This document shows positions 114 through 59,354 of a DNA stretch of 64,000 nt, one piece after another. Position 1 is the stretch's first letter, and the number at the start of each line of letters is the position of its first letter. Location of the stretch: contig NW_027266289.1 in assembly GCF_022045235.1 (NCBI RefSeq), forward strand, positions 434,001 to 498,000, given 5' to 3'. Source of the DNA: Haliotis cracherodii (lineage: Eukaryota). The position numbers were made by a program, and so were the translations under genes. The notes below the pieces were generated by a model, which made no database searches, was not told where the DNA came from, and worked only from the letters and a program-made list of their open reading frames with translations.

Positions 114-438
114 ATGATCTTGTTTCAAATGTCTGACATTTTGTTATTAGCATGCACATTGCCATACATTCTAAGTCAGTTACTGCACACTACAGGCAGA
201 TGTGCTAAAGTGACTTTCTACAGGAGGTCTGAGATGGACGATCTGGTGTTTGCCGGGAGTCTGATAGAAGAGATCAACCAGGTGGACATGAGGGTTGGGT
301 GTTTCTCTCAGTGTCAGTGGCGGGTGCGGTGTAACCTGGTCTTGTACAACCCGCTCACCAGGAAGTGTAGATTGTACACTGAAGACTTTGGCTCGAGCAG
401 TGACGGCACAGTTGATACTGGATGGCAGTACTATGGCA
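114..438 (+). CDS. PAN/apple-domain first exon A1 (putative signal peptide + PAN); no downstream exons of its own visible
   Basis: ATG at 114, hydrophobic leader MILFQMSDILLLACTLPYILSQ, PAN pattern C-x3-C-x5-C...YNP..RKCRL...GWQYY, ends at phase-1 donor A|GTGAGT; 325 nt, the same length as exon A2. Confidence 0.75.
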
Positions 439-8313: not shown

Positions 8314-11300
8314 ATGATGTTCCTGCAGCCAGTCGACATCTTGGAATTATTTGTCATTTTACAACAAGTCCGTTGTCAGTTGGTTTACAACATGGACAGT
8401 TGCACAAATGTGACATTCCACAGAAGGTCTGAGATGGATGATCTGGTGTTTGCCGGGAGCCTGATAGAAGAGATCAACCAGGTGGACATGAGGGCAGAGT
8501 GTTTCTCTAAGTGTCAGTGGCGGGTGATGTGTAACCTGGTCTCGTACAACCCGCTCACTAGGAAGTGTAGACTACACTCTGAAGGATTTGAGTCGAGCAG
8601 TGACGGTATGTTCGAGAGTGGATGGCAGTATTACGGGGGTGAGTATGACGGATGTGATGTGCAAAGTTCAAAAGTCCTGTGAAAGAAGTGATTGACATCA
8701 ACGACATTAGTGATGCGTCCGTAAATAATACCAGACGTAACATTACAAATCTGAAATGTATCACTATAAGGTTTGAGCATAGGCTTTTGTAATCTTTATT
8801 CTATTATGAATTTTAATGATATCAAAGATGTGTCAATATTGTAGGATAAACCATTATCTTCTGTCACAGGGAGAAATTCTCCAAATTATCAATGTAAATA
8901 ACCACCTATTTGACTCAACATGGACTATAACGTTATAGTATGAACTGCAACCACATGGAAAGGACATGCTTACCTTTTTCGCGAATATCTGGTGTCATCA
9001 TTCACTTAATTTCACTGCTTCTTTGTCTTTTAGGCAACTGGAATCTGTTTGGGCCTATAGTTGAGAATGATTATTCTCTCTCGTTGATGTCTTATATGAT
9101 ATGTGTTCGTGTGAAAAATATATGCATATGTTATACTTATATTTATAAATTAAATTAAATTGTCTGAAGAAAACCGTGAATTCGACAGACTCTCTACACA
9201 CCGGTACATGGTGATTCCCGAATTGAAAGGCGAAGGTTAATAGGTCCATACAGAAATAGATAGCGAAATCAGTCACTAAACACACACGACAAAACACATA
9301 TTTACTCATTACAGTCGAGCTTCGTTGTATCACATTCTCGGTTGTCTCGCCCTTCCTTCTATGATTATCATTAAATTATGATTATTCAGAAAAGAAGAAA
9401 ATTAAAAATGAAGACTATCGAGGCAAAGAACGAACTAGTTTTTTTATGATACGGTTACAAACGTTGAAACGTGGTGAACAAAAGATGAATAGATTTCATG
9501 TAATACTCTCTCATAATATGATGTTTGGTTTACGAGTGACTATGTGGCAGCAGTGTTGATTAATATACCCTATCACACAAATCGGTGCACACACGGATGT
9601 CCGGCAATTGACACAGATGGATGTCTTGAATGGGGCACTTGCTCCGTTCTTGAATCCAGGAATCCGTGATGGATGCAGGCAGAACAGTAAGTGTTTGCCG
9701 ACAGGTATCCCGTCCGTCCTGGGAAAGTAGATAGGACGCAAGCCAGATCGTTGAAGGAAGGTATCGAATGACTCTCGTCTCACATTTATATAGGAATAGC
9801 TAGCATTCCAGAATATGCTGCCTTGAAGCATATCGAACAAAGTTGTGCGGAAAATGAGAAATCTAAACAAGCCAGCTTTCTCATGTTAAATAAACATTAC
9901 TTACATATTCCGATTTTTTTCAAAACGTTTTGTGCTGGACGTGAAGGACAGTTTCAAATTTGAGGCATCAGTGTAGTGTTCTAGTTGTACTGGTACAAGA
10001 CGTGTGTTGTGCTCCCTCGCAAGGCTGTGTACTGTTCTTCCATTAATCGGTTTCAATACAGGAATCGCCTGAGCTGTTAATGAGGCAGTTTGGTTTCGAA
10101 TCCGTAGATGCACAAATGGAATGTTTGTCTTGTTGACGCTACGTCACACTTGGACGATCGGCCCGTGGCAAGCCATGAGTGTTTCCCTGCTGTAGATAAC
10201 ATGTCCAAAAAGATACAATTGCGTTTAAATGAACATTTAAATGTCTGGCAAATTAGTTGTGCAACGTACCCACGGCGTAGACGTTGATTTTCAGCAAGTC
10301 GTGGCACTGCTTAAACGTTAATTATGGTTAGGGTCAACTGTTTTAAAAGCACCTGATAGCTAAACAAGGATTGCGTGCTGTTCACATTGCAACATTAAAG
10401 CAGGTGGGAGAGTTTCATGCTCCACGCAAACACGCAAACGTCCAAATTGTGCGCCGTGAATGAACATGCACGTGAAAATTATGAATCACGACGCTGAAGT
10501 CGAGGCGATGTCTTCATGAATATATATCACCATTGAAAGCAGCATTATTTCATTTCAGAAAACATTTATTTTTATTAAACTTAACAACCAAGCACAGTTT
10601 CTTTCTTTTCCTTTAGAAAACAAAGACTGTGTTCTGTTGCGTTTATTTGTATCACCTTTACGTAAAAACACATATAGAAACCTTGTTTTGTTAGCAGAGC
10701 TTAACATGAACCATGAAACATATCCTTTAAATATCTGTCCCTTGTTAACAAAAATAATTACATCACTAAAGAGGTTTTTGAGTGGTGTGGAAGCCTAGTG
10801 TACAAGTGTTTGCTTGTCACGCCGAAAGCCCAGGTTCGCTTCCCAACATGATTACAATGTGTGAAACCCCTTTATGGTGTCCCCCGCGGTGATATTGGTA
10901 GGATACTGCTAAAGGCGGCATAAAATCATACTCACTTCTCACTGAAGGCAGTTTTGCTATTTTAATGTACCAGAAGTGAATCATTAATTCTGATAAGGAA
11001 AACAGTACCACCGGAAGACGCTGAGTGTTGGGTAAAGTGTATTCATAATGAAAAGCCATCCATTCAGATTGTGTTCCTTGATATTCTAAACTTTGTGTCA
11101 GTTCAACACCCGTTAAGTTCCCAGGTAAAATACTTTGCAAGGATACCAACTCAGAATCAGGCATGACACAATTTTTTGATTGAGGGTTTTACACAACAGA
11201 AACAAAACTGTTTGTCATTCTTAATATAGTCATACTATTAGCAAACTCGTCGTCTTTATATCAAAGACAAATATTATGAGATCAAACAAGAAATATGACG

Positions 11301-14300: not shown

Positions 14301-17300
14301 TTATGTAAGTTTGTTTTGGTTGTTGGAAATCATGTAACAAGTGCAGCAGTATTAGGAGATTGTGGTAGATATGGACTGTATGTTGATTACCACAAAAGGT
14401 GTATTAAATATTGGTTACATTTACTATATTTACCTAATACTAGATACCCAAAGCAACGTTATATACTATTGAAGTCTCTAGATGATGCTGGTCGCTTTAC
14501 ATGGGTCACATACTGTATGTTAAAAAAATGTTATATGATTATGGATTGGGATTTGTTTGGACTTCGCAAGTTGGTGATTGTAAAATGTTTATTGATACCT
14601 TTGTACAAAGACTAAAAGAATGATATAGTACAGTTTATGAATCTCGTAAATTAATACTACTTGTGTTTAGTTATTAAGACAATAATAGATTGCATTTAAT
14701 AACAAACAAAACATTGCATGAATAACAAACTGAGAAACAGACATATTTGGATTTAAATATTTCGATTGAAGTGTTTTAAACTTATGTTTGAATATTAAAC
14801 TTATGAAATTGTCAGTACTTGTTCATTGATTGATGTTATGGACCCCAAAGGTTCAGTACTCGGTTAATGCTTAATGTGCAGACCCCTGACTGACTGGGCG
14901 GGTGTGTTTATTTTATGTAGGTAAGCTAGCCCTGAGTTGAGGGAGTGGTGAGTATGTGTGTTGAATGTGGGTAACGTAAATGTAAGTAACCTTGAGTTGA
15001 GTGAGAGGTGTGTGTGTGTTCGATGTGGGTAACGTAAATTTAAGTAACCTCGAGTTGAGTGAGAGGTGTGTGTGTGTTCGATGTGGGTAACGTAAATGTA
15101 AGTAACCTCGAGTTGAGTGAGAGGTGTGTGTGTGTTCGATGTGGGTAACGTAAATGTAAGTAACCTCGAGTTGAGTGAGAGGTGTGTGTGTGTTCGATGT
15201 GGGTAACGTAAATGTAAGTAACCTCGAGTTGAGTGAGAGGTGTGTGTGTGTTCGATGTGGGTAACGTAAATGTAAGTAACCTTGAGTTGAGTGAGAGGTG
15301 TGTGTGTGTTCGATGTGGGTAACGTAAATGTAAGTAACCTTGAGTTGAGTGAGAGGTGTGTGTGTGTTCGATGTGGGTAACGTAAATGTAAGTAACCTCG
15401 AGTTGAGTGAGAGGTGTGTGTGTGTTCGATGTGGGTAACGTAAATGTAAGTAACCTCGAGTTGAGTGAGAGGTGTGTGTGTGTTCGATGTGGATAACGTA
15501 AATGTAAGTAACCTTGAGTTGAGCGAGAGGTGTGTGTGTGTGTGTGTGTAGTCGATGTGGATGACGTGANNNNNNNNNNNNNNNNNNNNNNNNNNNNNNN
15601 NNNNNNNNNNNNNNNNNNNNNNNNNNNNNNNNNNNNNNNNNNNNNNNNNNNNNNNNNNNNNNNNNNNNNNNNNNNNNNNNNNNNNNNNNNNNNNNNNNNN
15701 NNNNNNNNNNNNNNNNNNNNNNNNNNNNNNNNNNNNNNNNNNNNNNNNNNNNNNNNNNNNNNGTGAATGCAAGTAACCTGGAGTTGGGAGACTGAACAGC
15801 ATTACTTTTGCCTGTTTGTTTTTGTGAGGAGATAGGCGATGGGCGTGGGATTGGGATATTTTTGCTAGATTTCCTTGAACATTGGATCAAACAAAACGAT
15901 TACCTATGTTTCCAAAACGTTACCGGACTGAAACAGTCGCCGAAAGACTGCAAATTTAAGGTAAAAAAACACAAGTGTGATAAAACACTTAATGAAATAC
16001 ATCACCATCAAATAACTATTTCCTGTGTGTTTCATTGTAGCCACCATAGACATTGGGTGTATGTTTGCTTTTGCTCGCCACCAAAGAGTTCGCGTTCGAG
16101 TTTGTTACGGTACATTGAGGACAACCCAGCTGCCTGCAGGTTTAATGTTAGAAATGTTTGTTTAGTTCAAAATTCTATTTAGCACACTTAATCTACAGGT
16201 AACCTTGCTCACCATTGTAAACACATGTTGTTTATCTCCTGATCGGCAATTTACGTGAGTGGCTTTTGAATTTCCTCGTCATCATGGTAACTTTTACATC
16301 TTACCACTTCCTTCATATTAATAATCCACAAAGTATTGATTTGCCTCTGGTGGCAATCTCCAACTCAAACATGTACACGTATTTCAAGTGAATTGATGAC
16401 CTTGAAAGCACGCGCAAGGCCATGACGTTCAGAGCAAAGAGGCTTTACAGACCAAACTTGGTACACTCGCGGGACTTGAAAAAATAAAAATATTTACCAT
16501 CTCGACTACTTGGTAAACCATTAGTAGCAGTAAACAGGGTTACCGTCCAGTTAGACAATGATGTTCCTGCAGCCAGTGGACATCTTGGAATTATTTGTCA
16601 TTTTACAAGTTCGTTGTCAGTTTGTGTACAACATGGACAGTTGCACCAATGTGACATTCCACAGAAGGTCTGAAATGGATGCTCTGGTGTTTGCTGGATC
16701 CACTAACTTTGGTCCATCTTGATATCAATGTAGACAAAGTAGTCACACAAACACAGATAGAATCTAGTCACCAAAGCAAGCAAATACTAATCTGTATTCT
16801 AAAAACAAATACATTTGTTGTTGAACAGCTATGGAAAGAGAAATTGTCAACGCCAGAGAATAACAAGTCTCGGTTAAACATTTACTCACAGTTACATCTT
16901 TATAATGGCATCACCACAGTTACATCACCATAGTTACATCACCATAGTCACATCATCATAGTTACATCATCAAAGTCACATCATCATAGTTACATCACCA
17001 TATTTAGATCACCATAGTTACATCATCATTATCACATCATCATAGTTACATCACCATAGTTACATCACCATAGTTACATCACCATAGTAACATCATCATA
17101 GTTACATCATCATAGTCACACCATCCGTGTTACATCATCATAGTCACATTATCATAGTTACATCATCATAGTCACATCATCATAGTTACATCACCATAGT
17201 TACATCACCATAGTTACATCATCATAGTTACATCATCATAGTCACATCATCATAGTTACATCACCATAGTTTCATCACCATAGTTACAACACCATAGTCA

Positions 17301-20300
17301 CATCATCATAGTTACATCATCATAGTCACATCATCGTAGTTACATCACCATAGTTACATCACCATAGTTACATCACCATAGTCACACCATCATAGTTACA
17401 TCACTATAGTTACATCACCATAGTTACATCATCATTATCACATCATCATAGTTACATCATCATAGCTACATCACCATAGTCCCATCATCATAATCACATC
17501 ACCGTAGTTACATCACCATAGTTACATGACTATGGTTACATCATCATAGTCACACCATCCGTGTTGCATCACCATAGTTACATCATCATAGTCACACATG
17601 CTTATGATATAGGCGGAATGTAAAATGTGTTTTATCGCTTTTCTTTATCGACAGATTTTCCTGCATCGTATTCACATCACCATAGTTACATCACCATAGT
17701 TACATCACCATATTTAAATCACCATATTTACATCACCATAGACACAATATCATGGTTACATCACCATAGTCATATCACCATAGTTACATCACCATAATAA
17801 CATCACCATAGTCATATTATCATAATCACATCATCATAGTTACATCACCATATTTACATCACCATATTTGCATCACCATAGTCTCATCATCATAATCACA
17901 TCATCATATTTACATCACCATAGTCACATCATAATATTAACATCATCATAATCACATCATCATAGTTACATCACCATAGTTACATCACCATATTTACATC
18001 ACCATATTTGCATCACCATAGTCTCATCATCATAATCACATCATCATATTTACATCACCATAGTCACATCATAATATTAACATCATCATAATCACATCAT
18101 CATAGTTACATCACCATAGTTACATCACCATATTTACATCACCATAGTCTCATCATCATAATCACATCATCATATTTACATCACCATAGTCACATCATAA
18201 TAGTAGCATCATCATAATCACATCATCATAGTTACATCACCATAGTTACATCACCATAGACACAATATCATGGTTACATCACCATAGTCACATCACCATA
18301 GTTACATCACCATAATAACATCACCATAGTCACATCATCATAATCACATCATCATAGTTACATCACTACAGTTACATCACCATATTTACATCATCATAGT
18401 TACATCACCACAGTTACATCACCATATTTGCATCACCATATTGACATCACCATATTTACATCACCATAGTCACAATGTTTGAGATGTAGCAACATAATCA
18501 ACCTTCAGTGATATAGGATACACTCAGCTTTTCACCAACACCTGATATCGACGCCATCCTTTAGTGATTCATAAAAAAAAAAACATGCTAATTATATAGT
18601 CGGAATGTAAAACGAGTTTGTTATGATTATCGAAAGTGTTTTATCGCTTTTCTTTATCGACAGATTTTCCTGCAAGATATGATGGAGAATTGTGAATGGG
18701 GCATGCGCACATTGAGGCATATCAGATATCTGTCTTTTTGGTATTTCAATTATTTTCTTTCACAAAGTGAAAGGGGCAGAGATACTCTAAAGACATTTTC
18801 TGAAAACAACTATATGTCATTGCGAGTTGGAAATGCACTCAAAGTACCAAAGCACACCCTTTGCAAACTATTGCTTAAATTGGTTGTAGGTACACAAACA
18901 GTAATGGAAAGGAAACTGATGAGAATAGTAATAAGATGTTTTTTAGTGTGCGTTAGAACTGGTTCAGATGTGGGTGTTATGTAAGATTATTATTGTGATT
19001 ATGCTTCACAAAGTCCTAAAATATATCAAGTGATACCTTCATTCGACCAAGCGTACCACACAATTGGGATAAACAAGGGTAAGAGTCTAAACAGGAACAA
19101 TCCCACGTTAAGAAGTTCTTAAGTGGCATGGTGTGCTGGCTTAGGCAGGCGAATATTGCTGTGCAGACAAAGTCAACCACACCACAGATCACAAACACGA
19201 ATTAACAGTCAGTGTATAAATGTATTATGCATCCTAAACATTGATATAACAATCCCATAGAATCAGCTGGTACATTGTAAACGGTGATGCACTATATGAA
19301 CCAACAACATCAATCTCCGTGTCAGAACCCTTGTTCAGATGAGGATGAACACGTGGGTAGGAAGTGTGATTATAGCTGTAGATGTATCAGCAATCCTAAT
19401 TGCCTGGTGCAGACAAGAAAGGCCAGAAAAGGGAGATCTATTGATTCCCCCAAAAGTGAATCAGGAGGCCATGTCAGGTTACTATCTGTTCAGAGTTTGT
19501 GATGACCGCATTAACGCAAAGGTTATAAACTAAACAACGTTCCCCTTCGATAAAGCGGCAATTGTCACGTGTCGTGCCAACAGTCAACTTTCCCCTCATG
19601 TCAAGCAATATTCCAGCAGCTCCAGCCTTTGAAATACAATCAACCATGGTCTTTCTACCAAGATTTTAAACGACTCTTTTAGAAGTTGTTTGATCAGGGT
19701 TACAATAATCAAGGCCTCGGTAAAGCTTTCAAAATTGTTTATGGAAGACACGTGGAGCACATTACCAAATTGATTCATCGTTAACCAAAATGATGTCGGA
19801 TTTAATTCCCTGTTTTGACCGTGATTTTCAGGTGAACAAATGGCTTGCCTTTGTATGTATTTGTGACGGGCACCTAGGTGTGTCAGGATACGCTCACCTT
19901 TAGACGAACACCTGGTATCATCACTATTCCATTGTGATTCATAAGCACATGTGCATCATATAATCGGAATCTTTCACTCGACTTATTAACAGAGTTTTCT
20001 AGAATATGTGGAGGGTTTTGTTGCTTTTATAAAACAATTGTTATATTGCTTGAATTGTATTACTTGTCACCAGATAGTTCCATGTGCTAGACAATTGTGG
20101 CAGTTGCCACATTTCGACATTTCATATTGTCCTCATCAGTGTGTACATTGTTCTGTCTTGGCAGTCTCTTCCTCAATTCTAGTTGCTATATACCGACATC
20201 ATTGAATTCCTAGACACTAAGCTCTGCTCTTTCCCACAGCTGCCTGCGATGACTACAGATTGGCAAATAGTCGGGAGGACGTGGACGTCATCGACACAGA

Positions 20301-23190
20301 CCCAGCGGAGATGTGCAACAGCAGCTACTTAACAACATCTGACAACTCCTCTTCCTGTTTTAGAGGAGCATCCTGGAAAACAGTCAAAATAAAGTGTCGC
20401 CCGTGCTACTATGGTACCACCCAGCAGACACTAGTAAGATAAACGTAGCTCTGTTCAGATAGGCTTTGATCATTATTGCTAGACTATTCTTCATTTTTAG
20501 CAAAGTTGTAAGGGCAACTGATTGCAATAGACTGCAATATTCTAGAAGAGAGGTCCATAGGACTATTTGCTTTGACGTACAATTCAGGAGTTCCACAAAA
20601 GATGTTTCAGATTTGTTAGTGAGTAAAACCTGACAAGGCGAAAAGAAATGCTGCGTCATTCCCGCCTTATGAATAAATGTACTTGTACTATAATCTGTTA
20701 TTAAAGCATATAAACGCCAGTTGATCAGGATGATAATCAATAACAAATACATAGATATTATATTTCTCAGATTCAGTCCACACTACAAGTTGTGTGTGTC
20801 ATATGTTTCAAATTAATTCAGGAAGGTAAAAGATAGTTATGGCAGGCGAGCAGGTACACCAATACCTTATACTGAGTTGTTTAAGAAAGGAGAAGTGTTC
20901 ATCAAAGTCATTCTCAAAGAAAAATAAAGAAAAAAATAATGTAGCATGGCAGAGTGGAAATTGTACAAAAAGTGTCAGCAAATCGTTCATACAGAGAGTC
21001 GCGAAATTGGGAAAATTCAGTTCCAACCAATCAAAGAGAAATACAAAAATATGATGACGCACTTGGAGGACTTGTAGGAGAATTTCGTTGATGTATCGTT
21101 GAGCCTTAAGATTGCCCTGGATATTGACCAAACCTTTCTTGCCATGATGGGAGAAATCCGCCCACATCATTACGCTACCCTCACCAAACTGTCCACTTCC
21201 TTCCGACGTCTTTAGACTTGATTCGTCGCTGAACCAGACATCTATCACATCGCAGTTGAGTCCATGCCCTGTGTTGACGACACCAACGCAGTCGTTGTTG
21301 ACGATGTTGTTGACTCAATATGATGGTTCTGTACTGCTGGGCGGTACAGAAACGAGTGTCAACCAAGTGAAAAGCCATCTCCAATCGGCCCATTTCAAGG
21401 AAAAACCTCGGGCGTGTCATAGCACACCAGGTGTAAAATGTCTTATGGCTGGATATAGCTACAGGTTATAGAGGTTTAATGTGGCACGGTGTGGACAAGA
21501 TTGCCACAACGACATCGAAGTGGAATATCTAAAAAATATAATCCAGCGATATCGCATCCATCCATCCATCAATCATCACAAACATCATTGTACACATTTT
21601 TTTCAGGATACTTTAGGATTCATTAATTGACGAAATGATTGCTTCAATTTTATAAACATTGATTTTGATTCTACAATCATCTTAGGACCCCACAGCTTCC
21701 CTCACCGAAGATCTGGACTTTGATCTTGACGTTGGCATGAAACTGAGGCTCAGAGTAGCTGTATCAAGAACACACACGTAAGAGTGAATGAGTTAGAGAT
21801 TATTTGTTTTAGGCCGCATCAGTCACCTGGCAGCTATTTGCGGCGACAAATGTCTATAGTGGTATCATAGTTAACTGAAAACGATAAAAGTGACATTCAA
21901 GTTGTCCCAAAACTCTTAAAATGTCAAATTCAAGGGTACACAAATAAGAGAAAACCCAGTCATTTCAGTGTGCATCTACACAGTATTCAATGACATTGTT
22001 CGATTGGGGTATCTGACATTCAAGAAAAGCGTTTTTTCCGATGAACAAGGAAAAGTAACAATAAACAGCAAATATGCTTTTAAAAAGGAAATACGAAATA
22101 TGTAACAACACAGATGTTCCTTTGTGGATAAAGACAAACCTGAAATGAGTTGAATTATTATTTATGTGCAAGTTGTGCGCTCTCATGCTTCCGATAGATT
22201 TGTTCAATGCATCCATCCATCCTCATCCATTGCTTCTCCTGGCATACCTCCGTGCACTGCAGCTACAACGTGCGGTTCATGTCTCCCAATCAGGACGTCA
22301 TCTACCTGGCATCAGTCAGGTTCGACTTTCCTGCAGTTGGACTCTATAAGATCATCTTCAACACTCGTCAAAGCGGCGTATGGGGTAATGAATTTCGGAC
22401 CGACTTCACACCAAACAGCTCCGACAATTATGTAATTGAGATTGTCATAACAGAGACGTCTTTCCTGGTAGGTTGGTTGTCGTGAGAAGAAGAGCGAATG
22501 CTTTAAGTGTTGTTATAAACCTATCACCACATTTCTCTACATTACAACACGTAATGTTTCACTATAAGGTAAATTGATGCTTTCGTAGTTTTGTCTGCTA
22601 TTTCTTGATTTGTTCTGTTTGTTTATTTGTTTTTATCGCCGCACTCAGCAATATTCCAGCGGTCTGTAAATAATCGAATCTGGTCCAGACAATCCAGTTA
22701 TTGACGTCATGAGCATCGATCCACGCAATTGGGACATGATAACATGAACCAAGTCAGCGAACAAGACCCCCCGATCCCGTTAGTCGCCTCTTACGAAAGG
22801 CAAAGTCGCCCTTTACGGGTTAACGGTATCTTCACGGGTCATATTTCTTGCAGTTAGACGGTTCATATGGTGGAGCTTAAGATTTTAGATTTTCAACCCA
22901 AACCGAGGACATCTACACATGTTCTCTTGGTAGGGTGGTTTTCGTGGTTATATTACGATCTTCGTTATTAAAGAATGTATACTATTTTATGGTATAATGT
23001 CACAATTGAAGGATCACATATATCAATGTATGTACTTTGTTCTTTTTGACCATTTTGTTTCCAGACGTACGTCGATGGAACTTTGTGGATGACGAACCCC
23101 ATCCGCTTTCCTCTCAGCGGTGTCCGACGCATCCTGTTTGATGGATCCACTGCCCTCCATGAATTCAACATCGGGAAGGGAATGTGTTGA
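8314..23190 (+). CDS. Gene A: putatively secreted PAN + Sushi-like + galectin-like protein, 313 aa; exons 8314-8638, 20240-20433, 21686-21777, 22263-22467, 23065-23190
   Basis: All introns GT-AG with compatible phases (1,0,2,0); spliced frame is open to TGA at 23188-23190; exon sizes 325/194/92/205/126 mirror paralog B (322/197/92/202/117). An assembly gap lies in intron 1. Confidence 0.8.
9900..10320 (-). mobile_element. Tc1-like transposase remnant (N-terminal HTH region)
   Basis: MPRLAENQRLR..., GRSSKCDVA..., HLRIRNQTASLTAQAIP...INGRTV fragments in several frames. Confidence 0.6.
10780..10943 (+). mobile_element. tRNA-derived SINE family A (diverged copy)
   Basis: AGCCTAGTG...GGTTCGCTTCCC head, GGCGGCATAAAATCATACTCAC tail; homologous to copies at 52996, 56628, 62258. 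Confidence 0.8.
11452..12070 (+). mobile_element. Mariner-like transposon remnant
   Basis: TIR-like ACGAGGGCTGGTCAAAAAAGTT; decayed W-H..SP.P..FK...S.KKV.A and LLHDNA..H motifs. Confidence 0.6.
13650..13950 (+). mobile_element. 3' end fragment of an I/Nimb-type LINE
   Basis: Decayed EDVTMRRCRIGHSKYTH...KGEDHTFCIP C-terminal motif. Confidence 0.55.
13995..14680 (+). mobile_element. LINE (CR1/L2 group) RT C-terminal remnant
   Basis: KTEILVFRNGG, KPILLYSSEVWG, AVLGDCGRY, IKYWL motifs with frameshifts. Confidence 0.7.
14930..15569. repeat. 58-bp minisatellite with (GT)n core, ~11 copies, runs into the gap
   Basis: Unit GAGTTGAGTGAGAGGTGTGTGTGTGTTCGATGTGGGTAACGTAAATGTAAGTAACCTC. Confidence 0.95.
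15570..15762. other. Assembly gap (N run)
   Basis: 193 N. Confidence 1.
16558..16722 (+). pseudogene. Truncated duplicate of PAN first exon A2 (A3)
   Basis: MMFLQPVDILELFVILQVRCQFVYNMDSCTNVTFHRRSEMDALVFAGS, then homology ends and a stop follows; upstream 16213-16370 resembles 7976-8150. Confidence 0.85.
16910..18475. repeat. 14-bp minisatellite (CATAGTTACATCAC), ~100 copies
   Basis: Directly visible tandem array with one internal non-repeat island. Confidence 0.95.
19610..19960 (+). mobile_element. Penelope-like element 3' remnant
   Basis: Decayed LSTKIL...QGY...KAFKIVYGRH-type segment. Confidence 0.4.
21050..21520 (-). mobile_element. Tc1-like transposase fragment
   Basis: LSQQHRQQRLRWC, VWFSDES, FGEGSVMMW, GNLKAQRYINEIL. 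Confidence 0.85.
22610..22840 (-). mobile_element. SINE family B copy
   Basis: Homologous to 27262-27531; flanked by TATTTCTTG direct repeat. Confidence 0.8.
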
Positions 23191-50885: not shown

Positions 50886-53800
50886 CTAACAGAAGATTTG
50901 GACACTGTGGATGGCTGTGAATCCTTTCAATGTGACCCGACGGACGCCAGTGAGTGGGAGCCGCATCTCATTCTCCATCCAAAGAGTCCCGTCACCGAAA
51001 AGCTGGAAGTAACATTGACCTGGCAATTTAAAAGTTGATATAGACATACTTGATTTATAAAGGACTTAAGATAGATCTTCTGCGGTTAATAAATGTTATT
51101 GATAAAGATGTACGTTAATCAACGTGGGCCTGGAGGTAGACACACCTGATCAATGAACGACTTGTGATAGATTTGCCTATTAATAAATGATTAATAAATG
51201 TATTGACACAGATGTATTGTACTTAATGTAAGGCAGACAAACACTGAGTTATTTAGAAGTCAAGTGAATTATACACTTGTATTACCAGAAAATCTGGAAT
51301 TAGGCCTTCTACTTATAAAAGATCAACATTTTATCTGAAAACGCAGCATGTTGATAAGATGTTATGTGGTGACATTTTAGAAACCTGCTTCCTCATTCGT
51401 CCGACAGGGTCTGGAATCTTACTTTAGGCCATGATTTTGCTGCTGGTCGCATAATGACAACAACAAAAATATTCAGAAACACTGCTTTTGCAAACCAGCC
51501 CGTTTCGCAATTTAAAATACATATCTTCCTTCATTGACACAGCTTAATAACATGTGTCGATTCGTACATTACTTACAGCAGGTGTGGCAAGATATTTCAG
51601 GTGGAAAACTTGATGAACAAATGTATTTGTACCGTGACGTCATGTCTATCGTTTTACAATGCTTAGACTTGCATTATGTACAATGTTATGACGTCATGAT
51701 ATTGGATTGTACTTGAGAGGAAAACTTTACAAAGAGTGATTTTGGACTCTAAGGAATGATGCTTACAGGATATCCTTGCATGATTATATTGTGTCTTTGG
51801 TGGTTTATGTTTTATGGTTCACGTTTCTTTTGTCATTGTGCCATTGAATAATGGGGATACCTTTACCCTTTTCAAATTCGAAACCTCACGCTATCTCAAA
51901 ACTTTAAAGGTATCAAGGTAGGTGTCTTAATTGTACGCTATCTTCTGTATTGGAGCTTTTTCTACTAAATATAATGTTAAACGTCGTATTGAAATAACAC
52001 CCAGCATGGTGTTATGACATTGGTTCAGGGCATAAATAGGCGTTCGGGTGTTTTACAGTACAGAGTCAGGGTCCCATAGTCCCCTCCTTGTGATCCGGAA
52101 TACCTTTGCCCTGCATCACGTTAAAAGACGTTAATGTACAAGGATATGACAACAGGCATTGGAGGACAAATGATCAGCTATAAATTATGTATGCATGGTG
52201 ATCAGTATACCAATTCGTGTTTATATTATTATTCTTGAGACAATATTAACGATTTTATAATCGAAAAACAATAACTGTTTTCCTTCCATCAGATGTTATT
52301 TTTGTTACATTTTGTTTTTGTCACCCTTTCTCAATTATATGAGTCGTGCAATACATGACTTGAAATAAATGTCATGTGTAATGCGCTATGTACCTTAAAT
52401 GAACTCTCAGTGATCTGGATTTCAATCACATAGTTGTTGATGTTGTCGACGTCGATGTGATCTACATACTCCTCCAGTCCAAAGGACCCTCCTTGTTTTG
52501 TGTTGAAGATGAGTCGTGACGTGGAGCCCCATCTCCATCTGAGGGACAAGATGAGGGCCAAGTCGGTGTTTGGCAGCACAAAGGTCACAGCGTTACTGTA
52601 AGGACAATATTGATCATTTGCTTACTGCAGCCTGGGCCACCACCCTTTTGTCATCACATCGATGTGTATCCCCACACAGTGGACTTGTTGGGATGTTTGT
52701 ATGTATATTTATTTTGTTGCCATGACATCAATCATCTACTTCAGGGGTGACTTGATGGGATGTGTTATCTGCTGTCATGCCGAAGGGAAATAGAAGATTC
52801 TTAAATTTGGCACCTGGCAGCGAGAAGTCGCACAACAATTCAAGGTCCACAAAAAAAACTAACCCTAACCCTGACCCTGAGGCACTTAGGATATCATACG
52901 ATTAGTCATAAACAACAGTTTAAAAGATGACGTCATGATATGTATGGCTTAAGCCAGGTTAAGGTGTTTTACTTTTACATACTACTCATACTGCGGGGGC
53001 GGTCGGGTAGGCTAGTGGTTAAAGCGTTTGCTCGTCACGCCGATGACCCGGGTTCGATTCCCGACATGGGTACAATGTGTGAAGCCCATTTCTGGTGTCT
53101 CCCGCCGTAATGTTGCTGGAATATTGCTAAAAGCGGCGTAAAACCATACTCACTCACTCACTACTCATACTGCGAAATACAGTCCCTCCATACATTTTAG
53201 ATACATGATCTAAGAAAGCCCAGATCGTTGCAGTGTCAATACGAATAGGGATTGGAACATTCAAACAGCGGATCATGTTACGACACATGGATAAAGGCGT
53301 TGTGCATCTGTGACACGGGAATTGCCAAACATTAAAATAAAACATATACTACTATTAAAAACATGTAAGAAATAAATACACTTTGAAAGACAAAACTCAT
53401 TTGACTGCTTCATATGCGTGTAAGTTATGACTGCATGTTGATGATGTTATGACTGCATGTTGATGATGTTATGACTGCATGTTGATGATGTTATGACTGC
53501 ATGTTGATGATGTTATGACTGCATGTTGATGATGTTATGACTGCATGCTGACGATGTTATGATTGCATGTTGACGATGTTATGACAGCGTGTTGACGATG
53601 TTATGACTGCGTCTTGACGATGTTATGACTGCGTGTTGACGATGTTATGACTGCATGTTGACGATGTTATGACTGCGTGTTGACGATGTTATGACTGCGT
53701 GTTGACGATGTTATGACTGCATGTTGACGATATAATGACTGTGTGTTGACGATGTTTTGAGTGCGTCTTGACGATGTTTTGAATGCGTCTTGACGATGTT

Positions 53801-56800
53801 ATGACTGCATGTTGACGATGTTATGACTGCGTGTTGACGATGTTATGACTGCGTGTTGACGATGTTATGACTGCATGTTGACGATATAATGACTGTGTGT
53901 TGACGATGTTTTGAGTGCGTCTTGACGATGTTTTGAATGCGTCTTGACGATGTTATGACTGCATGTTGACGATGTTATGACTGCGTATTGACAATGTTAT
54001 GACTGCGTGTTGACAATGTTATGACTGTATGTTGGCGATGTTATGACTGCATGTTGACGATGTTTTGAGTGCGTGTTGAAGATGTTTTGAGTGCGTGTTG
54101 ACGATGTTATGACTGCATGTTGACGATGTTATGACTGCATGTTGACGATGTTTTTACTGCGTGTTGACGATGTTATGACTGCATGTTGACGATCTTATGA
54201 CTGCGTGTTGACGATGTTATTACTGCATGTTGACGATGTTATGTCTGCATGTTGATGATGTTATGACTGCATGTTGACGGTGTTATGACTGCGTGTTGAC
54301 GATGTTTTTACTGCGTGTTGACGATGTTATGACTGCATGTTGACGATCTTATGACTGCGTGTTGACGATGTTATTACTGCATGTTGACGATGTTATGTCT
54401 GCATGTTGATGATGTTATGACTGCATGTTGACGGTGTTATGACTGCGTGTTGACGATCTTATTACTGCATGATGACGATGTTATGTCTGCATGTTGATGA
54501 TGTTATGACTGCATGTTGACGATATTATTACTGCGTGTTGACGATATGTCTTTCAACCTTGCCCTTACTGTAAACATGACTCTTTTAAGGATAACAACTT
54601 ATTTTATTCTTTGTCATGACGTTTCAGAGCTACTTCTTGCTCCTTCGCCTAATGCACGTCCAAGAAGGAGCTCTGAAACGGCGTGCCAGAGACTAATAAT
54701 CTGCTGTCCAGAACAGTGTGATGTTTTCGTTTCCTCGCAACTTCAAAGACTTCATTACTTATTGAATATGTGTATCACAACCCTGATCTTACTATTTAAC
54801 GATATCTCCTGCAACTGTCAACCTTAAGGTCATCCCTGCAGCGAGGTCAAAGGGCAAGTCTTCATTCAGATGTGTTGTTGGTAGCTGAATAACAAAGCAA
54901 AATTATTTATGAATCACACCGGCGCTAAAACCCGAGTTTACACCACTTGAACAAACCGAGTTGCGTGTGTTTCCCGATATCATCCTTTGAGCGTCTAAAT
55001 GGCCATCGTGTATGGCCGTATGCTTGTTCATTTCCTAGCATGCATACCTTGTGGAAATACTGTCTCTCCGTGTGGAGTTACAAATCTGTTCATTGCTGTG
55101 TCGGGCATTCGGATTTCAAACATAAATAAAACTATATCATTCCTCAACTCACAAACTCTATACTCGTGTTGCTTCATGAACAGTTATAGTAAGTCACAAA
55201 ATATTACAGATTTTGTAATATGGCAGGTATGTCACAAAGACACTACATGATTATGGTCAACAAGAGGAACTATGAATACATCCAGACGTACTGTAGACAC
55301 AACGGGCGTTTCAAGGTAACACAATGTCTAAGAACATTGAAACACGTTCAGACATACCATAGACACCACGGGCGTACCAGTGTAACATGACGTGCATTTG
55401 ATTCTCACGCTTTCCCAAGATCCATCTCGCAGACAGGATGAGGTTTCATTTGCAGTGACGACGTTGAAGGGATCCTGGCAAACGTCTTCCACGGCAGTGT
55501 TGATGATGTCTACACCTGGACGGGCGTTGGCCAGTCTGTACCCATCACACGACACTGGAACATTGTATGTGGTGAACTGGAACATTGTTTGTAGTGAACT
55601 GGAACATTGAATGTGGTGAACTGGAACATTGTATGTGGTGAACTGGATCATTGTATGTAGTGAACTGGAACATTGTATGTGGTGAACTGGAACATTGTAT
55701 GTGGTGAACTGGATCATTGTATGTAGTGAACTGGAACATTGTATGTGGTGAACTGGAACATTGTATGTGGTGAATTGGAACATTGTACGTGGTGAATTGA
55801 AACATCGTATGTGGTGAACCGGAACATTGTATGTGGTGAACTGGAGCATTGTATGTGGTGAACTAGAACATTGTATGTGGTGAACTGGAACATTGTATGT
55901 GGTAAACTGGAACATTGAATGTGGTGAACTGTAACATTGTATGTGGTGAACTGTAACATTGTATGTGGTGAACTGGAACACTGTTTGTGGTAAACTGGAA
56001 CATTGTATGTGGTGAACTAGAACATTGTATGTGGTGAACTGTAACATTGAATGTAGTGAACTGTAACATTGTATGTGGTGAACTGGAACATTGAATGTGG
56101 TGAACTGTAACATTGTATGTGGTGAACTGGAACATTGTATGTGATGAACTGGAACATTGTATGTGGTGAACTAGAACATTGTATGTGATGAACTGGAACA
56201 TTGTATGTGGTGAACTGGAACATTGTATGTGGTGAACTGGAACATTGTATGTGATGAACTGGAACAATGTATGTGATGAACTGGAACATTGTATGTGGTG
56301 AACTGGAACATTGTATGTGGTGAACTGGAACATTGTATGTGGTGAACTGGAACATTGTTTGTGGTAAACTGGAACAAAAAATATGTTCGTTTTATACGTC
56401 AGTTTGTTATAAGCGCGTTCGTTATAAACGTAGTTTACTGAATTATGCATTGTTTTTTTATTTTTTATTTCGCTACATTGAATGCGTAGCTGTGTTATAT
56501 GTGGTAACACATGAGGCAAAAGACGGACTTGGCAGGTTATAAGATTTCAAATTCACTTTACTGCAACGGATATTCATGTTTAAATTGTGTAATGAAAGAA
56601 ATGTTCAACAGTTCTTTAACAAGATATGGGGCGGTCGGGTAGCCTAGTGGTTAAAGCGTTCGCTCGTCACGCCGAAGACCCAGGTTCGAATGCCGACATG
56701 GGAACAATGTGTGAAGCCCATTTCTGGTGTCCCCCACCGTGATATTGCTGGAATATTGCTAAAAGCGGCGTAAAACCATACGCACTCACTCATTCTTTCA

Positions 56801-58360
56801 GCAACAGCCACCTGGCATTGTCTTCCAGCACAGACAACCCGAGACCGCATGTCAAGGCTCATACTGAACATTGTGCACAACACGAACATCCACGTTTTAC
56901 CTTGCCCGACTCGTTCACACACTCACTTTAACAAGATGTCTTCCGCATTCTGACTCGTCAACGTGTAAAAATCATTCAAGTTTGATTACGGGTATGTGTT
57001 GGTGGATCTGTGTTTTACCCTGGACAAGTCAATAAATCGTGGTATTCGCCTGCTATATCATTCCTCTTACAATGATTGCAACTTCTTAACTTGGTATACT
57101 TTCACATTGTCCCTTCGCTATCGACAATCAGCGGTTAGTAGATCGTATCTTGATAAGAATTGGAATATTAGGATTGTTCGTCAATCGTAATACGTCGGAT
57201 TATACATGATCAAATATGGGCCAGAAATGTTCTACATAAATATATAAATATATATATATATAAAGCGCAGTAAAGTAAAGCGCAGTAAACTTCTAACACT
57301 CAGACATAATATAGCAATAATTGAATAAGTGGAGTAAGATTGAACACAGTTTTAATTGGCTAGTGCTTTCAGCTCGTACCACGTACGAGTCTCGTCAGGC
57401 CATAACTACTTGATGAGACTCGTACGTGGTACAAGTTGAAAGTGCTAGCACATTATAACTGTATTCAATCTTATTCCAGTTATATAATTATTACAATATA
57501 TATTTGTATAGTCGATGAGTCGATGTATTGGTGGTTCTAGGCCGTGACCACGTCATACCAAAAGACTTCAAAAGATGCTACTTGTTATTGAGAGGATACA
57601 ACGAGGACTTGTCTGCTCGGATGTTGTTTTATCATTCCTGTGAATCAGGATGTCGATCCACGTCAACTATCGACCGTTGAAATTGTTTCTTGCAAATAAT
57701 TACACATGCCGCGTTGACGGAGAAGGAACCAATTGTCGTAATTGCCTCATTAAAATTTTTAAAAAAACTAAGACATCAAATAATGCTTTCTTTCTAAGTG
57801 GGCTTGCGAATCCGAAGTTGTATTGCCGCTAGTGTCAGCAACCCATGGGCGCAAAGTGTCAGAGAGATCAGCTGTCTCCGACGCCGCGGGGTTATCCTAA
57901 ACATACACAAACATCTGTACATTTCAAACGCAGCTGTGATACTTTAATCTCTGAAGTCCTCATACATTTTAGAATCCAATGCGAAAACCTCTACTTGTTT
58001 GAAATGTAATTTAAGCAAAATTCAGATTTTGCACAGTATTTTTTTACTCTTATATAGGGAGATCCATTCGTTTAATTGTTGCATACATTGGCTCGCGTGT
58101 TTGAGAAATTCCTGCGAAGAGTATCATAGCACGAATTAAAAGTATATACATTATAATGATCAGGTAATTTCAAAAGAATTCGTACATGTACAGTCCTGTT
58201 TGACGCAATGCCTGACGCAAAACCACGCACAACGATGACGGTAGTTAAGCGATCTACATGTCTGACTAAATATCTTGGTTTCATTGGAAAAAACTTAAAA
58301 CCAAATAACAGTACGCAGATTGTAAGATAAATGGTATCTGATAGACACTCTTGTATTTAT

Positions 58361-58403
<43 letters not shown>

Positions 58404-59354
58404 GATAATTAAATACCCTTACATAAATACAAGGCACATCACCTTCTACATGCCCCCTTTCTCTAAATGGGCACACATTTATCTCGCTCATGGCAGTAAT
58501 TTACCTCCATTGCTACTTTTATCATAGTGAATTGGGGGAAAGATAAAGCTGAGGTGACACAATGAGTCCAGAGTATATAGAAACATAGAACTGAGATAAA
58601 TACACTTGAAAAATGTAAGTGCGCCATTGACAGCTAAACACAAAACGTGAATGACTCAGTCTCAGTATGTAGCCCCTGTACAACTGACTTATAGCATCTT
58701 ACCCTCTACAGAGACAATACTTGCATGACAGTGAGCTTAACCTTCAACTTCTTTATGTTCATAGTCAGTTATCGTTACATCTCTAAGTCTCTATAGCCTT
58801 GTCGTAATATGACTGAGGATTCGCATTCAAAATCCCTATTATTGTAATTGGCTTGCTGATGCCAAGATCGTTTTTATGCATTTCACGAAGTAACCAAGTT
58901 GCTTCATTTAGACCTAAGAAACGCATTTGAATAAATCATGCACTTACTCAATTATTTCGCCTCAAATAATGATTGCATTTCATTTGTGGGAAAAGTGTTA
59001 AAGTCTTTGGTAAATATTATTCTAAATCCTACCACCATAGTACTGCCATCCAGTTTCAACTGTGCAATCACTGCTTGAATCAAAGCCTTCAGAGTGTAGC
59101 CTGCACGTCCTGGTGAGTGGGTTGTACAAGACCAGGTTACACCGCAGCCGCCACTGACACTGAGAGAAACACTCAACCCTCATGTCCACCTGGTTGATCT
59201 CGTCTATCAGGCTCCCGGAAAACACCAGATCATCCATCTCAGACCTTCTGTGGAATGTCACATTGGTGCAACTGTCCATGTTGTACACCAACTGACTTAA
59301 AACACGGGGAATTTGGTTGACACAGAGCAGAAGGTAGACACCCAACAGGACCAT
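50886..59354 (-). CDS. Gene B: putatively secreted PAN + Sushi-like + galectin-like protein, 309 aa; exons 59354-59033, 55554-55358, 54884-54793, 52595-52394, 51002-50886
   Basis: Leader MVLLGVYLLLCVNQIPRVLSQ; all introns GT-AG, phases 1,0,2,0 identical to gene A; open spliced frame ending ...HSVQIFC-stop; every exon aligns with gene A. Confidence 0.88.
52996..53159 (+). mobile_element. tRNA-derived SINE family A, full length
   Basis: Box A/B head, (ACTC)n tail, 15-bp TSD ACTACTCATACTGCG (52981-52995, 53160-53174). Confidence 0.92.
53424..54545. repeat. 22-bp minisatellite, ~50 copies
   Basis: Unit GTTATGACTGCATGTTGACGAT. Confidence 0.95.
55555..56376. repeat. 22-bp minisatellite, ~37 copies, abutting gene B exon 2
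   Basis: Unit CTGGAACATTGTATGTGGTGAA. Confidence 0.95.
56626..56925 (+). mobile_element. SINE family A with 3' extension of Tc1-derived sequence
   Basis: 12-bp TSD CTTTAACAAGAT at 56614-56625 and 56926-56937 encloses the SINE plus ~130 bp matching 61504-61626. Confidence 0.85.
57330..57478. ncRNA. Inverted repeat of two decayed minimal hammerhead ribozyme motifs (Penelope pLTR-like)
   Basis: Minus 57402-57357: TGGC CTGACGA G ACTCGTAC GTG GTACGAGC T GAAA GCAC TA GCCA; plus 57409-57451: CTTGATGA G ACTCGTAC GTG GTACAAGT T GAAA GTGC TA GCAC. Confidence 0.65.

What the first reader, a model, noticed from the sequence alone, without database searches (positions are those of the whole stretch)
50886..59354. 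Unusual architecture: signal peptide + PAN/apple + Sushi-like + degenerate galectin domain (two convergent paralogs)
Seen: exons 3-5 translate to a galectin-like sandwich (A: DVIYLASVRFD..IIFNTRQSGVWGNEFR...YVIEIVI...TYVDG...IRFPLSGVRRILFDG; B: DLALILSLRW..LIFNTKQGGSFGLEEY...). Established: canonical galectins use H-x-N-x-R...N...W-x-x-E-x-R and usually lack signal peptides. Gene A loses H and N (L, S) but keeps R, N, W, E, R. Gene B also loses W and the last R. Exon 2 has CCP-like C...C...C-x4-W...C spacing. Inference: a classically secreted chimeric family with altered or lost beta-galactoside binding. I do not recognise this combination as a named family.
Basis: partly seen in the sequence, partly recalled or inferred. 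Interest (0 to 1): 0.8.

Follow-up and report, generated by a model that had tools for sequence, protein, structure and literature searches.

The report
Abalone secreted PAN–galectin-fold mosaic lectin genes
Two intact black-abalone genes encode probably secreted proteins that join a PAN/apple module to a galectin-type sugar-binding fold with an altered binding groove. They belong to an uncharacterised gene family found so far only in abalone.

Summary
The window is Haliotis cracherodii. Gene B (minus strand, 50886-59354) and gene A (plus strand, 8314-23190) are intact five-exon paralogs. Their spliced products equal two public 'uncharacterized protein' models, P0040 (309 aa) and P0042 (313 aa).

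What was tested:
- **PAN/apple:** confirmed by Pfam PAN_1 at about 30 bits.
- **Galectin domain:** confirmed three ways. Pfam Gal-bind_lectin is above cut-off. A PDB profile search returned galectins almost exclusively. The AlphaFold C-terminal domain superposes on galectin-9 N-CRD at Z 20.2, 1.8-2.4 Å over 142-146 residues.
- **Motif changes:** confirmed. His becomes Leu/Ile and Asn becomes Ser in every copy. Arg, Asn and Glu are kept. Trp is kept in A-type copies and is Phe/Tyr in the others. The last Arg is lost in B.
- **'Sushi' reading of exon 2:** not supported. Its first Cys completes the PAN profile, and its last two Cys lie on the first strand of the galectin fold.

The family has at least 13 copies in this genome. 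Public proteins come from four Haliotis species only, and no paper describes it. This scan already reported the family on another piece of this genome (s1-843338).

Secretion, splicing in vivo and the ligand are untested. Secreted galectin mosaics (Biomphalaria GREP) and PAN-plus-C-type-lectin mosaics are known, so this is a new variant of a known kind.

The parts
59033..59354 (-). Gene B exon 1: start codon, hydrophobic leader (residues 1-21) and PAN/apple domain up to its fifth Cys. Ends in phase 1 at a G|GTAGGA donor.
   Evidence: translation, donor. (PAN_1 32.2 bits). (100% identical to P0040 residues 1-107). (hydropathy).
55358..55554 (-). Gene B exon 2. Its first Cys (C110) completes the PAN profile. 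It then carries a linker of about 46 residues with two Cys and an N-x-T sequon. Its last residues (from about 157, with C161 and C164) form the first strand of the galectin fold.
   Evidence: TTCCAG| acceptor, ATG|GTATGT donor, phase 0. (PAN_1 residues 42-110 = profile 8-76/76). (galectin alignment from 157-162). (Sushi not supported).
54793..54884 (-). Gene B exon 3 (92 nt): N-terminal strands of the galectin fold. It was found only through conservation with gene A.
   Evidence: 67% identity to A 21689-21760, E 2e-6. (CAG| acceptor, TA|GTAAGA donor, phase 2).
52394..52595 (-). Gene B exon 4: galectin core strands S4-S6 with the altered motif I-x-S-x-R ... N ... F-x-x-E-x-Y.
   Evidence: Gal-bind_lectin profile 40-96, sub-threshold alone. 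(25.0 bits in the whole protein). (motif alignment).
50886..51002 (-). Gene B exon 5: C-terminal strands of the galectin fold, the conserved terminal Cys and the stop codon.
   Evidence: (P0040 residues 270-309). (terminal Cys in all full-length members).
8314..8638 (+). Gene A exon 1 (leader + PAN), with a G|GTGAGT donor.
   Evidence: (PAN_1 32.8 bits). (matches the P0042 N-terminus).
20240..20433 (+). Gene A exon 2: last PAN Cys, Cys-containing linker and the start of the galectin fold.
   Evidence: (100% identical to P0042 residues 109-173).
21686..21777 (+). Gene A exon 3 (92 nt, the same length as in B), with an AC|GTAAGA donor.
22263..22467 (+). Gene A exon 4: galectin core with L-x-S-x-R ... 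N ... W-G-x-E-x-R.
   Evidence: Gal-bind_lectin 25.1 bits, above cut-off, profile 39-95..
23065..23190 (+). Gene A exon 5: C-terminal galectin strands, terminal Cys and stop codon.
114..438 (+). Extra intact copy of the leader+PAN exon with a GTGAGT donor. No exons 2-5 follow before gene A, and no retrieved public protein uses it. It is either an orphan or an alternative first exon.
   Evidence: (best match P0036 at 88.5%, which is encoded on another contig).
16558..16701 (+). Truncated duplicate of gene A exon 1 (first 48-49 codons, 94% nt identity to 8314-8638), lying inside intron 1 of gene A.

Best explanation
Shown: genes A and B are two intact, convergently oriented members of an abalone-restricted multigene family. 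Each encodes a protein of about 310 aa built as hydrophobic leader, PAN/apple domain (six Cys, the last one encoded in exon 2), a short Cys-containing N-glycosylatable linker, and one galectin-fold domain ending in a conserved C-terminal Cys.

Shown: the galectin domain descends from ordinary galectin genes. It shares sequence profile, fold and the position of the intron after the core exon.

Shown: its groove is remodelled. His becomes Leu/Ile/Gln and Asn becomes Ser throughout. Arg, Asn and Glu are kept, and the stacking position is always aromatic (Trp in A-type copies, Phe/Tyr in the others).

Inferred: the proteins enter the secretory pathway and act as soluble recognition lectins. The remodelled groove would bind a glycan other than the classical beta-galactoside, or bind it differently. 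The conserved PAN module would give a second contact, to protein or sugar. The odd eleventh Cys would allow disulfide-linked dimers, so that ligands can be cross-linked. Lineage-specific expansion and faster change in the groove exon fit a defence or other self/non-self recognition role.
For: Gene models:
- GT-AG sites and consistent phases in both genes.
- Exact identity with public models P0040 and P0042.

Domains:
- PAN_1 30-33 bits.
- Gal-bind_lectin above cut-off in A exon 4, P0040, P0002, P0005 and P0006.
- An exon-4 profile against PDB sequences returned galectins almost exclusively, best E 8e-6. The only listed non-galectin was a fibre protein at E 0.22.

Fold:
- AlphaFold C-terminal domain pLDDT 70-86.
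- Foldseek top hits are all galectin CRDs, E 4e-11, TM 0.8-0.84 on the target.
- VIA-align Z 20.2, rmsd 1.8-2.4 Å over 142-146 residues.

Shared intron: canonical galectin core exons in this genome end at profile position 97-98 and the next exon starts at 94-96. Exon 4 of A and B does the same.

Groove conservation: across 13 paralogs Ser, Arg and Glu are invariant, Asn is kept in 12 of 13, and the stacking position is always aromatic.

Secretory features:
- N-terminal hydrophobic stretch (KD10 2.5-2.8), with no membrane-like segment elsewhere.
- N-x-S/T sequons recurring in most members.
- 11 conserved Cys.

Family size and range:
- At least 13 exon-4 and 14 exon-2 copies on two contigs.
- Only Haliotis proteins among 1.84 billion representatives and in the word search.

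Rates:
- Mean pairwise identity is 72% in PAN and 49% in exon 4.
- Pairwise dN/dS among six recent paralogs is 0.5-1.7 in exon 4. Among four of those paralogs it is 0.07-0.47 in exon 2.
Against: - No transcript evidence could be obtained. The four runs offered were genomic-looking contigs of relatives, and they covered intron and exon alike.
- No signal-peptide predictor was available. Gene A's leader contains Asp and Glu in its hydrophobic core.
- Loss of the His and Asn that contact galactose O4 in classical galectins could equally mean loss of sugar binding (established knowledge of galectin-1/-3 sites).
- The dN/dS values rest on about 64 codons and few changes, so they do not separate diversifying selection from relaxed constraint.
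- The N-terminal half of the model is unreliable (pLDDT <50). Disulfide pairing and dimerisation are therefore conjecture.
- No tissue, ligand or phenotype is known.
Confidence: 0.6

Rival explanations
1. The galectin-fold domain has lost carbohydrate binding and serves as a protein-binding or purely structural module, as in some galectin-related proteins. Any lectin activity would reside in the PAN/apple domain.
For: - His and Asn of the H-x-N-x-R triad are absent in all 13 copies. Non-A-type copies also lack Trp and the final Arg.
- The PAN region gives a weak match (E 0.029) to the Sarcocystis apple-domain protein 2yil.
- PAN is the most conserved part of the protein at 72% mean identity.
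- GRIFIN appears among the close structural matches at Z 18.3-18.6.
Against: - The residues that remain on the canonical groove (Ser, Arg, Asn, aromatic, Glu) are the most conserved positions of exon 4 across deeply diverged paralogs. This would be unexpected if the groove were idle.
- Ser in place of Asn also occurs in ordinary invertebrate galectin CRDs found in the same searches, as H-I-S-V-R in 4hl0, P0012 and P0017.
Confidence: 0.25
2. One reading: exon 2 encodes a genuine, very divergent Sushi/CCP module between PAN and the galectin domain.
For: - The Cys and Trp spacing C-x22-C-x14-C-x5-W-x6-C resembles a short CCP, and the Trp and four Cys are invariant in 12 paralogs.
- There is a weak Pfam Sushi match of 14.9 bits (E 0.036) in the two B-type copies.
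Against: - The Sushi score is below the 20.7-bit cut-off, and 10 of 12 paralogs give no match.
- A PDB profile search gave no hit at E<=10.
- The exon alone folds at pLDDT 43.
- The first Cys is taken by the last position of the PAN_1 profile in P0040 and P0002.
- The last two Cys sit in the stretch that superposes on galectin strand S1.
Confidence: 0.12
3. One or both genes are unexpressed relics, and the public proteins are only computational gene models.
For: - No RNA evidence was obtained here.
- Orphan and truncated exon-1 copies lie nearby.
- At least one family copy in the genome carries a stop codon (C6:7826996).
Against: - Both genes have complete open frames over five exons, canonical splice sites and preserved phases.
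- All 11 Cys are conserved.
- A-versus-B dN/dS in the mature PAN exon is about 0.16.
- Models of about 310 aa with the same domain order exist in H. rufescens, H. asinina and H. rubra.
Confidence: 0.05

Closest known systems
Canonical galectins (e.g. galectin-9 and galectin-8 N-terminal CRDs, Toxascaris leonina galectin 4hl0)
   Same: - Same beta-sandwich fold (Z 18-20).
- Pfam PF00337 above cut-off.
- Same position of the intron after the core exon as in this genome's ordinary galectin genes.
- Arg, Asn and Glu of the binding motif retained.
   Different: - N-terminal leader plus PAN domain, where classical galectins lack a signal peptide (established knowledge).
- His becomes Leu/Ile and Asn becomes Ser in all copies.
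- Trp and the last Arg are lost outside the A-type copies.
- Conserved C-terminal Cys.
- Only 15-25% identity.
Biomphalaria glabrata GREP (galectin-related protein of the VIgL family)
   Same: A gastropod plasma protein with non-lectin N-terminal modules followed by one C-terminal galectin domain, with a recognition role proposed (PMC5433772).
   Different: - GREP carries two IgSF domains, whereas here there is a PAN/apple domain and no Ig match.
- GREP was recovered from snail plasma on columns of immobilised schistosome larval proteins, whereas nothing is known experimentally here.
- No sequence relationship beyond the galectin domain was tested.
PAN/apple + C-type lectin mosaics of nematodes and Biomphalaria
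   Same: A PAN module joined to a carbohydrate-recognition domain in secreted invertebrate proteins (PMC5297725; PMC13712769).
   Different: The lectin partner there is a C-type lectin domain, not a galectin fold. I found no paper describing PAN joined to a galectin domain.
Galectin-related proteins with incomplete binding motifs (GRIFIN and similar)
   Same: Galectin fold with substitutions in the seven-residue signature. Chicken GRIFIN is a close structural match (Z 18.3-18.6).
   Different: Those are single-domain proteins without leader or PAN (own knowledge). The pattern of substitutions was not compared residue by residue.
Mollusc shell-matrix proteins combining chitin-binding, Sushi and galectin domains (Haliotis laevigata proteome)
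   Same: Abalone secreted proteins that contain a galectin domain among other modules (PMC6003135).
   Different: Those are listed with two or more chitin-binding domains plus other modules and no PAN. They are not the family found here.

Membership tests
Galectin (Pfam PF00337, Gal-bind_lectin) | Sequence match to the family profile above the curated cut-off (22.1 bits) | tested here: met
   A exon 4 alone scores 25.1 bits. Whole gene B protein P0040 scores 25.0 bits over profile 40-132. Relatives P0002, P0005 and P0006 score 27.4, 38.6 and 37.4 bits. B exon 4 alone is sub-threshold at 13.4 bits.
Galectin (Pfam PF00337, Gal-bind_lectin) | Two-sheet galectin beta-sandwich fold | tested here: met
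   AlphaFold model residues 162-309 have pLDDT 70-86. Foldseek hits are all galectins at E 4e-11. VIA-align gives Z 20.2 and rmsd 1.8-2.4 Å over 142-146 residues against galectin-9 N-CRD.
Galectin (Pfam PF00337, Gal-bind_lectin) | Canonical sugar-binding signature H-x-N-x-R ... N ... W-x-x-E-x-R | tested here: not met
   Profile alignments to galectin-1 and 4hl0 and the 13-copy alignment give: A = L,S,R,N,W,E,R (5 of 7) and B = I,S,R,N,F,E,Y (3 of 7). No copy has His or the first Asn.
Galectin (Pfam PF00337, Gal-bind_lectin) | Beta-galactoside binding | not testable with these tools
   Needs recombinant protein with a glycan array or lactose-column binding.
Galectin (Pfam PF00337, Gal-bind_lectin) | Gene structure: core exon ending at the same place as in other galectin genes | tested here: met
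   Canonical galectin exons in this genome end at profile 97-98 and the next exon starts at 94-96. Exon 4 of A and B ends at profile 95-96, one residue from the exon end.
PAN/apple (Pfam PF00024, PAN_1) | Profile match above cut-off (21.4 bits) with the C-x3-C-x5-C core and outer Cys pair | tested here: met
   Scores of 32.2, 32.8 and 33.1 bits for the three full exon-1 copies. P0040 scores 29.8 bits, with residues 42-110 matching profile 8-76/76 and ending on Cys110. Core Cys are conserved in all members. Disulfide pairing itself was not tested.
Sushi/CCP (Pfam PF00084) | Profile match above cut-off (20.7 bits) | tested here: not met
   14.9 bits in the 2 B-type copies and nothing in the other 10. 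A family profile against PDB sequences gave no hit at E<=10.
Sushi/CCP (Pfam PF00084) | CCP beta-sandwich with C1-C3 and C2-C4 disulfides | tested here: inconclusive
   The exon-2 model has pLDDT 43, too poor to search. Cys spacing is compatible, but C1 is claimed by PAN and C4 lies in the galectin S1 stretch.
VIgL / GREP (IgSF + galectin) | One or two N-terminal immunoglobulin-superfamily domains | tested here: not met
   No Ig-family Pfam match in any exon or in P0040 and P0002.
Classically secreted protein | Cleavable N-terminal signal peptide | tested here: inconclusive
   Only a hydropathy heuristic was available. KD10 is 2.8 (B) and 2.5 (A) within the first 20 residues, and no later segment exceeds 1.3 over 19 residues. 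No SignalP was available. Gene A's core contains Asp and Glu.

The most novel reading that the evidence does not exclude
The family may be an abalone-specific recognition system built on two contrasting parts. A constant PAN exon would be kept alike between distant paralogs by exon-limited sequence exchange. A galectin-fold groove that has left beta-galactoside recognition would diversify between copies to read other glycans, microbial or algal. The spare intact PAN first exon upstream of gene A would serve as an alternative 5' exon.
Probability: 0.12. Interest if true: 0.65.

Novelty: new variant of a known kind. Interest (0 to 1): 0.4.

Why it matters
Galectins are defined by a cytosolic, leaderless origin and a fixed beta-galactoside signature. 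Here a galectin CRD was captured behind a leader and a PAN module. Its groove was rebuilt but kept under constraint, and the gene then multiplied in one gastropod lineage.

If the groove binds a new ligand, this would widen the known specificity range of the galectin fold. It would also add a third kind of mollusc mosaic lectin beside the Ig-linked (FREP/CREP/GREP) and PAN-C-type-lectin kinds.

Black abalone is endangered and disease-limited, so a lineage-specific secreted lectin family is a reasonable candidate for immune studies. The genes are already in RefSeq as uncharacterised proteins, so the gain is interpretation rather than discovery of sequence.

Tried and rejected
- **RNA evidence.** The look-up of sequencing runs offered four runs with at most 5% of the words. 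Laid on 50400-56399, they were contigs of relatives that cross exon-intron borders at about 92% identity and pile up on a repeat at 52996-53162. This says nothing about splicing or expression.
- **Sushi test.** Pfam on 12 paralogs, a PDB profile search, AlphaFold of exon 2 alone and an ESM Atlas look-up of residues 108-175 gave either no support or no usable result.
- **8.2-kb tandem duplication.** I rejected this as the source of the exon-1 copies. Similarity stops at the exon borders.
- **Phase-1 donor after '...SCYT'.** I rejected this for exon 2. The phase-0 donors ATG|GTATGT (B) and CTA|GTAAGA (A) are the ones that fit exon 3 and the public proteins.
- **Minus-strand ORFs at 3328-6383.** Pfam gave no clear family.
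- **Joined step.** Whole-protein tests used P0040 and P0042, public proteins returned by the search tool.
- **Other constraints.** The N run at 15570-15762 was left as it is.
Full report
**What is in the sequence**

The gene B peptides lie on the minus strand at 52466-52564. The gene A peptides lie on the plus strand at 22294-23145. The finding's coordinates (50886-59354) therefore cover gene B only. Gene A ends 27.7 kb upstream and points towards B, so the pair is convergent.

Comparing the two loci in translation recovered a small exon that open-frame listing had missed: B 54884-54793 and A 21686-21777. With it, both genes have five exons with GT-AG borders and matching phases.

- **Gene B:** 59354-59033, 55554-55358, 54884-54793, 52595-52394 and 51002-50886. 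This is 930 nt.
- **Gene A:** 8314-8638, 20240-20433, 21686-21777, 22263-22467 and 23065-23190. This is 942 nt.

**Identity of the genes**

A profile of exon 4 from 13 copies in this genome was run against 1.84 billion representative proteins. Only 24 scored E<=0.001.

- Three were abalone proteins with this layout.
- Nineteen of the other 21 were Pfam-scanned or carry a source name. Seventeen of them are ordinary multi-CRD galectins. P0023 and P0024 gave no galectin match.

A word search with the 311-aa abalone protein P0002 returned 16 proteins, all 'uncharacterized protein' from Haliotis rufescens, H. cracherodii, H. asinina and H. rubra. Most carry precomputed PF00024 + PF00337.

Two of them match the window exon for exon.

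- P0040 (XP_071115878.1, 309 aa) is gene B.
- P0042 (XP_071115951.1, 313 aa) is gene A, using the first exon at 8314-8638.

The window is therefore black abalone, and my models coincide with independent public gene models. This is not transcript evidence, and I could not obtain any. The runs offered were genomic-looking contigs of relatives.

**PAN/apple domain**

PAN_1 is above cut-off for all three full copies of exon 1, at 32-33 bits. In the whole proteins the match runs to the last profile position, exactly on the first Cys of exon 2. That is P0040 residues 42-110 = profile 8-76/76, and P0002 residues 45-111 = profile 10-76/76.

**Galectin domain**

Gal-bind_lectin is above cut-off for A exon 4 alone (25.1 bits), for P0040 (25.0 bits) and for three relatives (27-39 bits). 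The exon-4 profile against PDB sequences found galectins almost exclusively, with best E 8e-6. The one listed exception was a fibre protein at E 0.22.

An AlphaFold model of P0040, built with a 19-sequence family alignment, is confident only for residues 162-309 (pLDDT 70-86). That part matches galectin CRDs and nothing else.

- Foldseek: E 4e-11, TM 0.8-0.84 on the target.
- VIA-align: Z 20.2, rmsd 1.8-2.4 Å over 142-146 residues of galectin-9 N-CRD.

Ordinary galectin genes in this genome break their core exon at profile position 97-98, with the next exon starting at 94-96. Exon 4 of A and B breaks at the same place. This argues for descent from a galectin gene by addition of 5' exons.

**The binding motif**

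Alignment to galectin-1 and to the nematode galectin 4hl0, together with the 13-copy alignment, gives the seven signature positions below.

| Signature position | Gene A | Gene B | Across the 13 copies |
|---|---|---|---|
| His | L | I | Never His (L in 11, I in gene B, Q in L004) |
| first Asn | S | S | Always Ser |
| first Arg | R | R | Always Arg |
| second Asn | N | N | Asn in 12 of 13 |
| Trp | W | F | Trp in the five A-type copies, Phe/Tyr in the others, always aromatic |
| Glu | E | E | Always Glu |
| last Arg | R | Y | Arg in four of the five A-type copies |

These retained positions are the best-conserved columns of exon 4, although the exon as a whole is the most divergent part of the protein. 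Mean pairwise identity is 49% in exon 4 against 72% in PAN. Ser at the Asn position also occurs in ordinary invertebrate galectin CRDs seen in the same searches. I read this as a remodelled groove that is still constrained, not an abandoned one. That is an inference.

**Exon 2 is not shown to be Sushi**

- Pfam Sushi scores 14.9 bits against a cut-off of 20.7, and only in the two B-type copies of 12.
- A family profile finds nothing in PDB at E<=10.
- The exon alone folds at pLDDT 43.
- The ESM Atlas look-up gave no usable hit.

Two structural points matter more. The supposed first Cys of the CCP is the terminal Cys of the PAN profile. The supposed last Cys (C161), with C164, lies in the stretch that superposes on the first strand of galectin CRDs, since the aligned range starts at residues 157-162.

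About 46 residues remain between the two domains, carrying two Cys and an N-x-T sequon that recurs in most members. I call this a Cys-containing linker. A very degenerate CCP cannot be excluded, and I give it about 0.12.

**Secretory character**

Both proteins start with a hydrophobic stretch and have no later membrane-like segment. Most members share N-x-S/T sequons. All full-length members share 11 Cys in the mature part: six assignable to PAN, four in exon 2 and the very last residue. The odd number leaves one Cys free for a dimer or an inter-domain staple. No signal-peptide predictor was available, and gene A's leader has two acidic residues in its core.

**Family and evolution**

The genome holds at least 13 exon-4 and 14 exon-2 copies, in clusters on contigs C26 and C6. 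At least one carries a stop codon.

Pairwise dN/dS among six recent C6 paralogs is 0.5-1.7 in exon 4. Among four of those paralogs it is 0.07-0.47 in exon 2. This is suggestive only, because it rests on about 64 codons.

Between A and B, synonymous divergence is saturated in exons 2-4 and reaches 1.29 in exon 5. It is only 0.45 in the mature PAN part of exon 1, with dN 0.07. The similarity stops at the exon borders.

**Comparison with what is known**

I found no paper on PAN joined to a galectin domain, on these loci, or on PAN domains in Haliotis. Secreted mosaics with a C-terminal galectin domain are known in snails. Biomphalaria GREP has IgSF1, IgSF2 and a galectin domain, and was recovered from snail plasma on columns of immobilised schistosome larval proteins (PMC5433772). 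PAN joined to C-type lectin domains is known in nematodes and Biomphalaria. Abalone shell-matrix proteins with chitin-binding, Sushi and galectin domains are a different architecture.

Its remark about snail galectin mosaics led me to check GREP.

**Verdict**

The thing is a lineage-restricted new variant of a known kind, the secreted mosaic lectin with a galectin-fold domain. It is already present in RefSeq as uncharacterised proteins. Function, ligand, expression and secretion remain to be tested.

Noticed in passing
window 114-438 (+): A third, intact copy of the leader+PAN exon with an open frame, all five Cys and a GTGAGT donor. No exons 2-5 follow before gene A, and no retrieved public protein is 90% or more identical to it. 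It may be an orphan or an alternative first exon of gene A.
   Followed up: partly
window 16558-16701 (+): A truncated duplicate of gene A exon 1 (first 48-49 codons, 94% nt identity to 8314-8638) inside gene A intron 1. It is followed by a 1.6-kb minisatellite at 16878-18474.
   Followed up: partly
window 8314-8638 vs 59033-59354: Exon 1 of A and B is 85% identical in DNA, with dS 0.45 and dN 0.07 in the mature part. The other exons are 51-64% identical, with dS saturated in exons 2-4 and 1.29 in exon 5. The flanks show no similarity. This is consistent with exon-limited gene conversion or exon exchange.
   Followed up: partly
window 55554-56376 and 53424-54545: A 22-bp minisatellite (37 copies) runs right up to the splice acceptor of gene B exon 2. 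The TTCCAG acceptor belongs to the last repeat unit, and every unit carries a potential acceptor. A second, unrelated 22-bp array (51 copies) sits in intron 3.
   Followed up: no
window 52996-53162 (also about 56626-56790): A short interspersed repeat inside gene B introns. It drew summed contig depths in the hundreds of thousands in all four runs laid.
   Followed up: no
window 3328-6383 (-): Several long minus-strand ORFs (up to 334 aa) in a G+C-richer stretch between the first two PAN exons, probably a decayed mobile element. Pfam gave only a sub-threshold CCCH zinc-finger match.
   Followed up: partly
G000, many contigs (e.g. C45:33020788-33028781, C12:12054909-12093402): At least 40 further galectin core exons above the Pfam cut-off are scattered over the genome, several in tandem clusters. 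The black abalone galectin repertoire is large.
   Followed up: no
window 31373-34413: A 3-kb tandem array with a period of about 204 bp and 94-98% identity between copies, in the G+C-richest part of the window, between the two genes.
   Followed up: no
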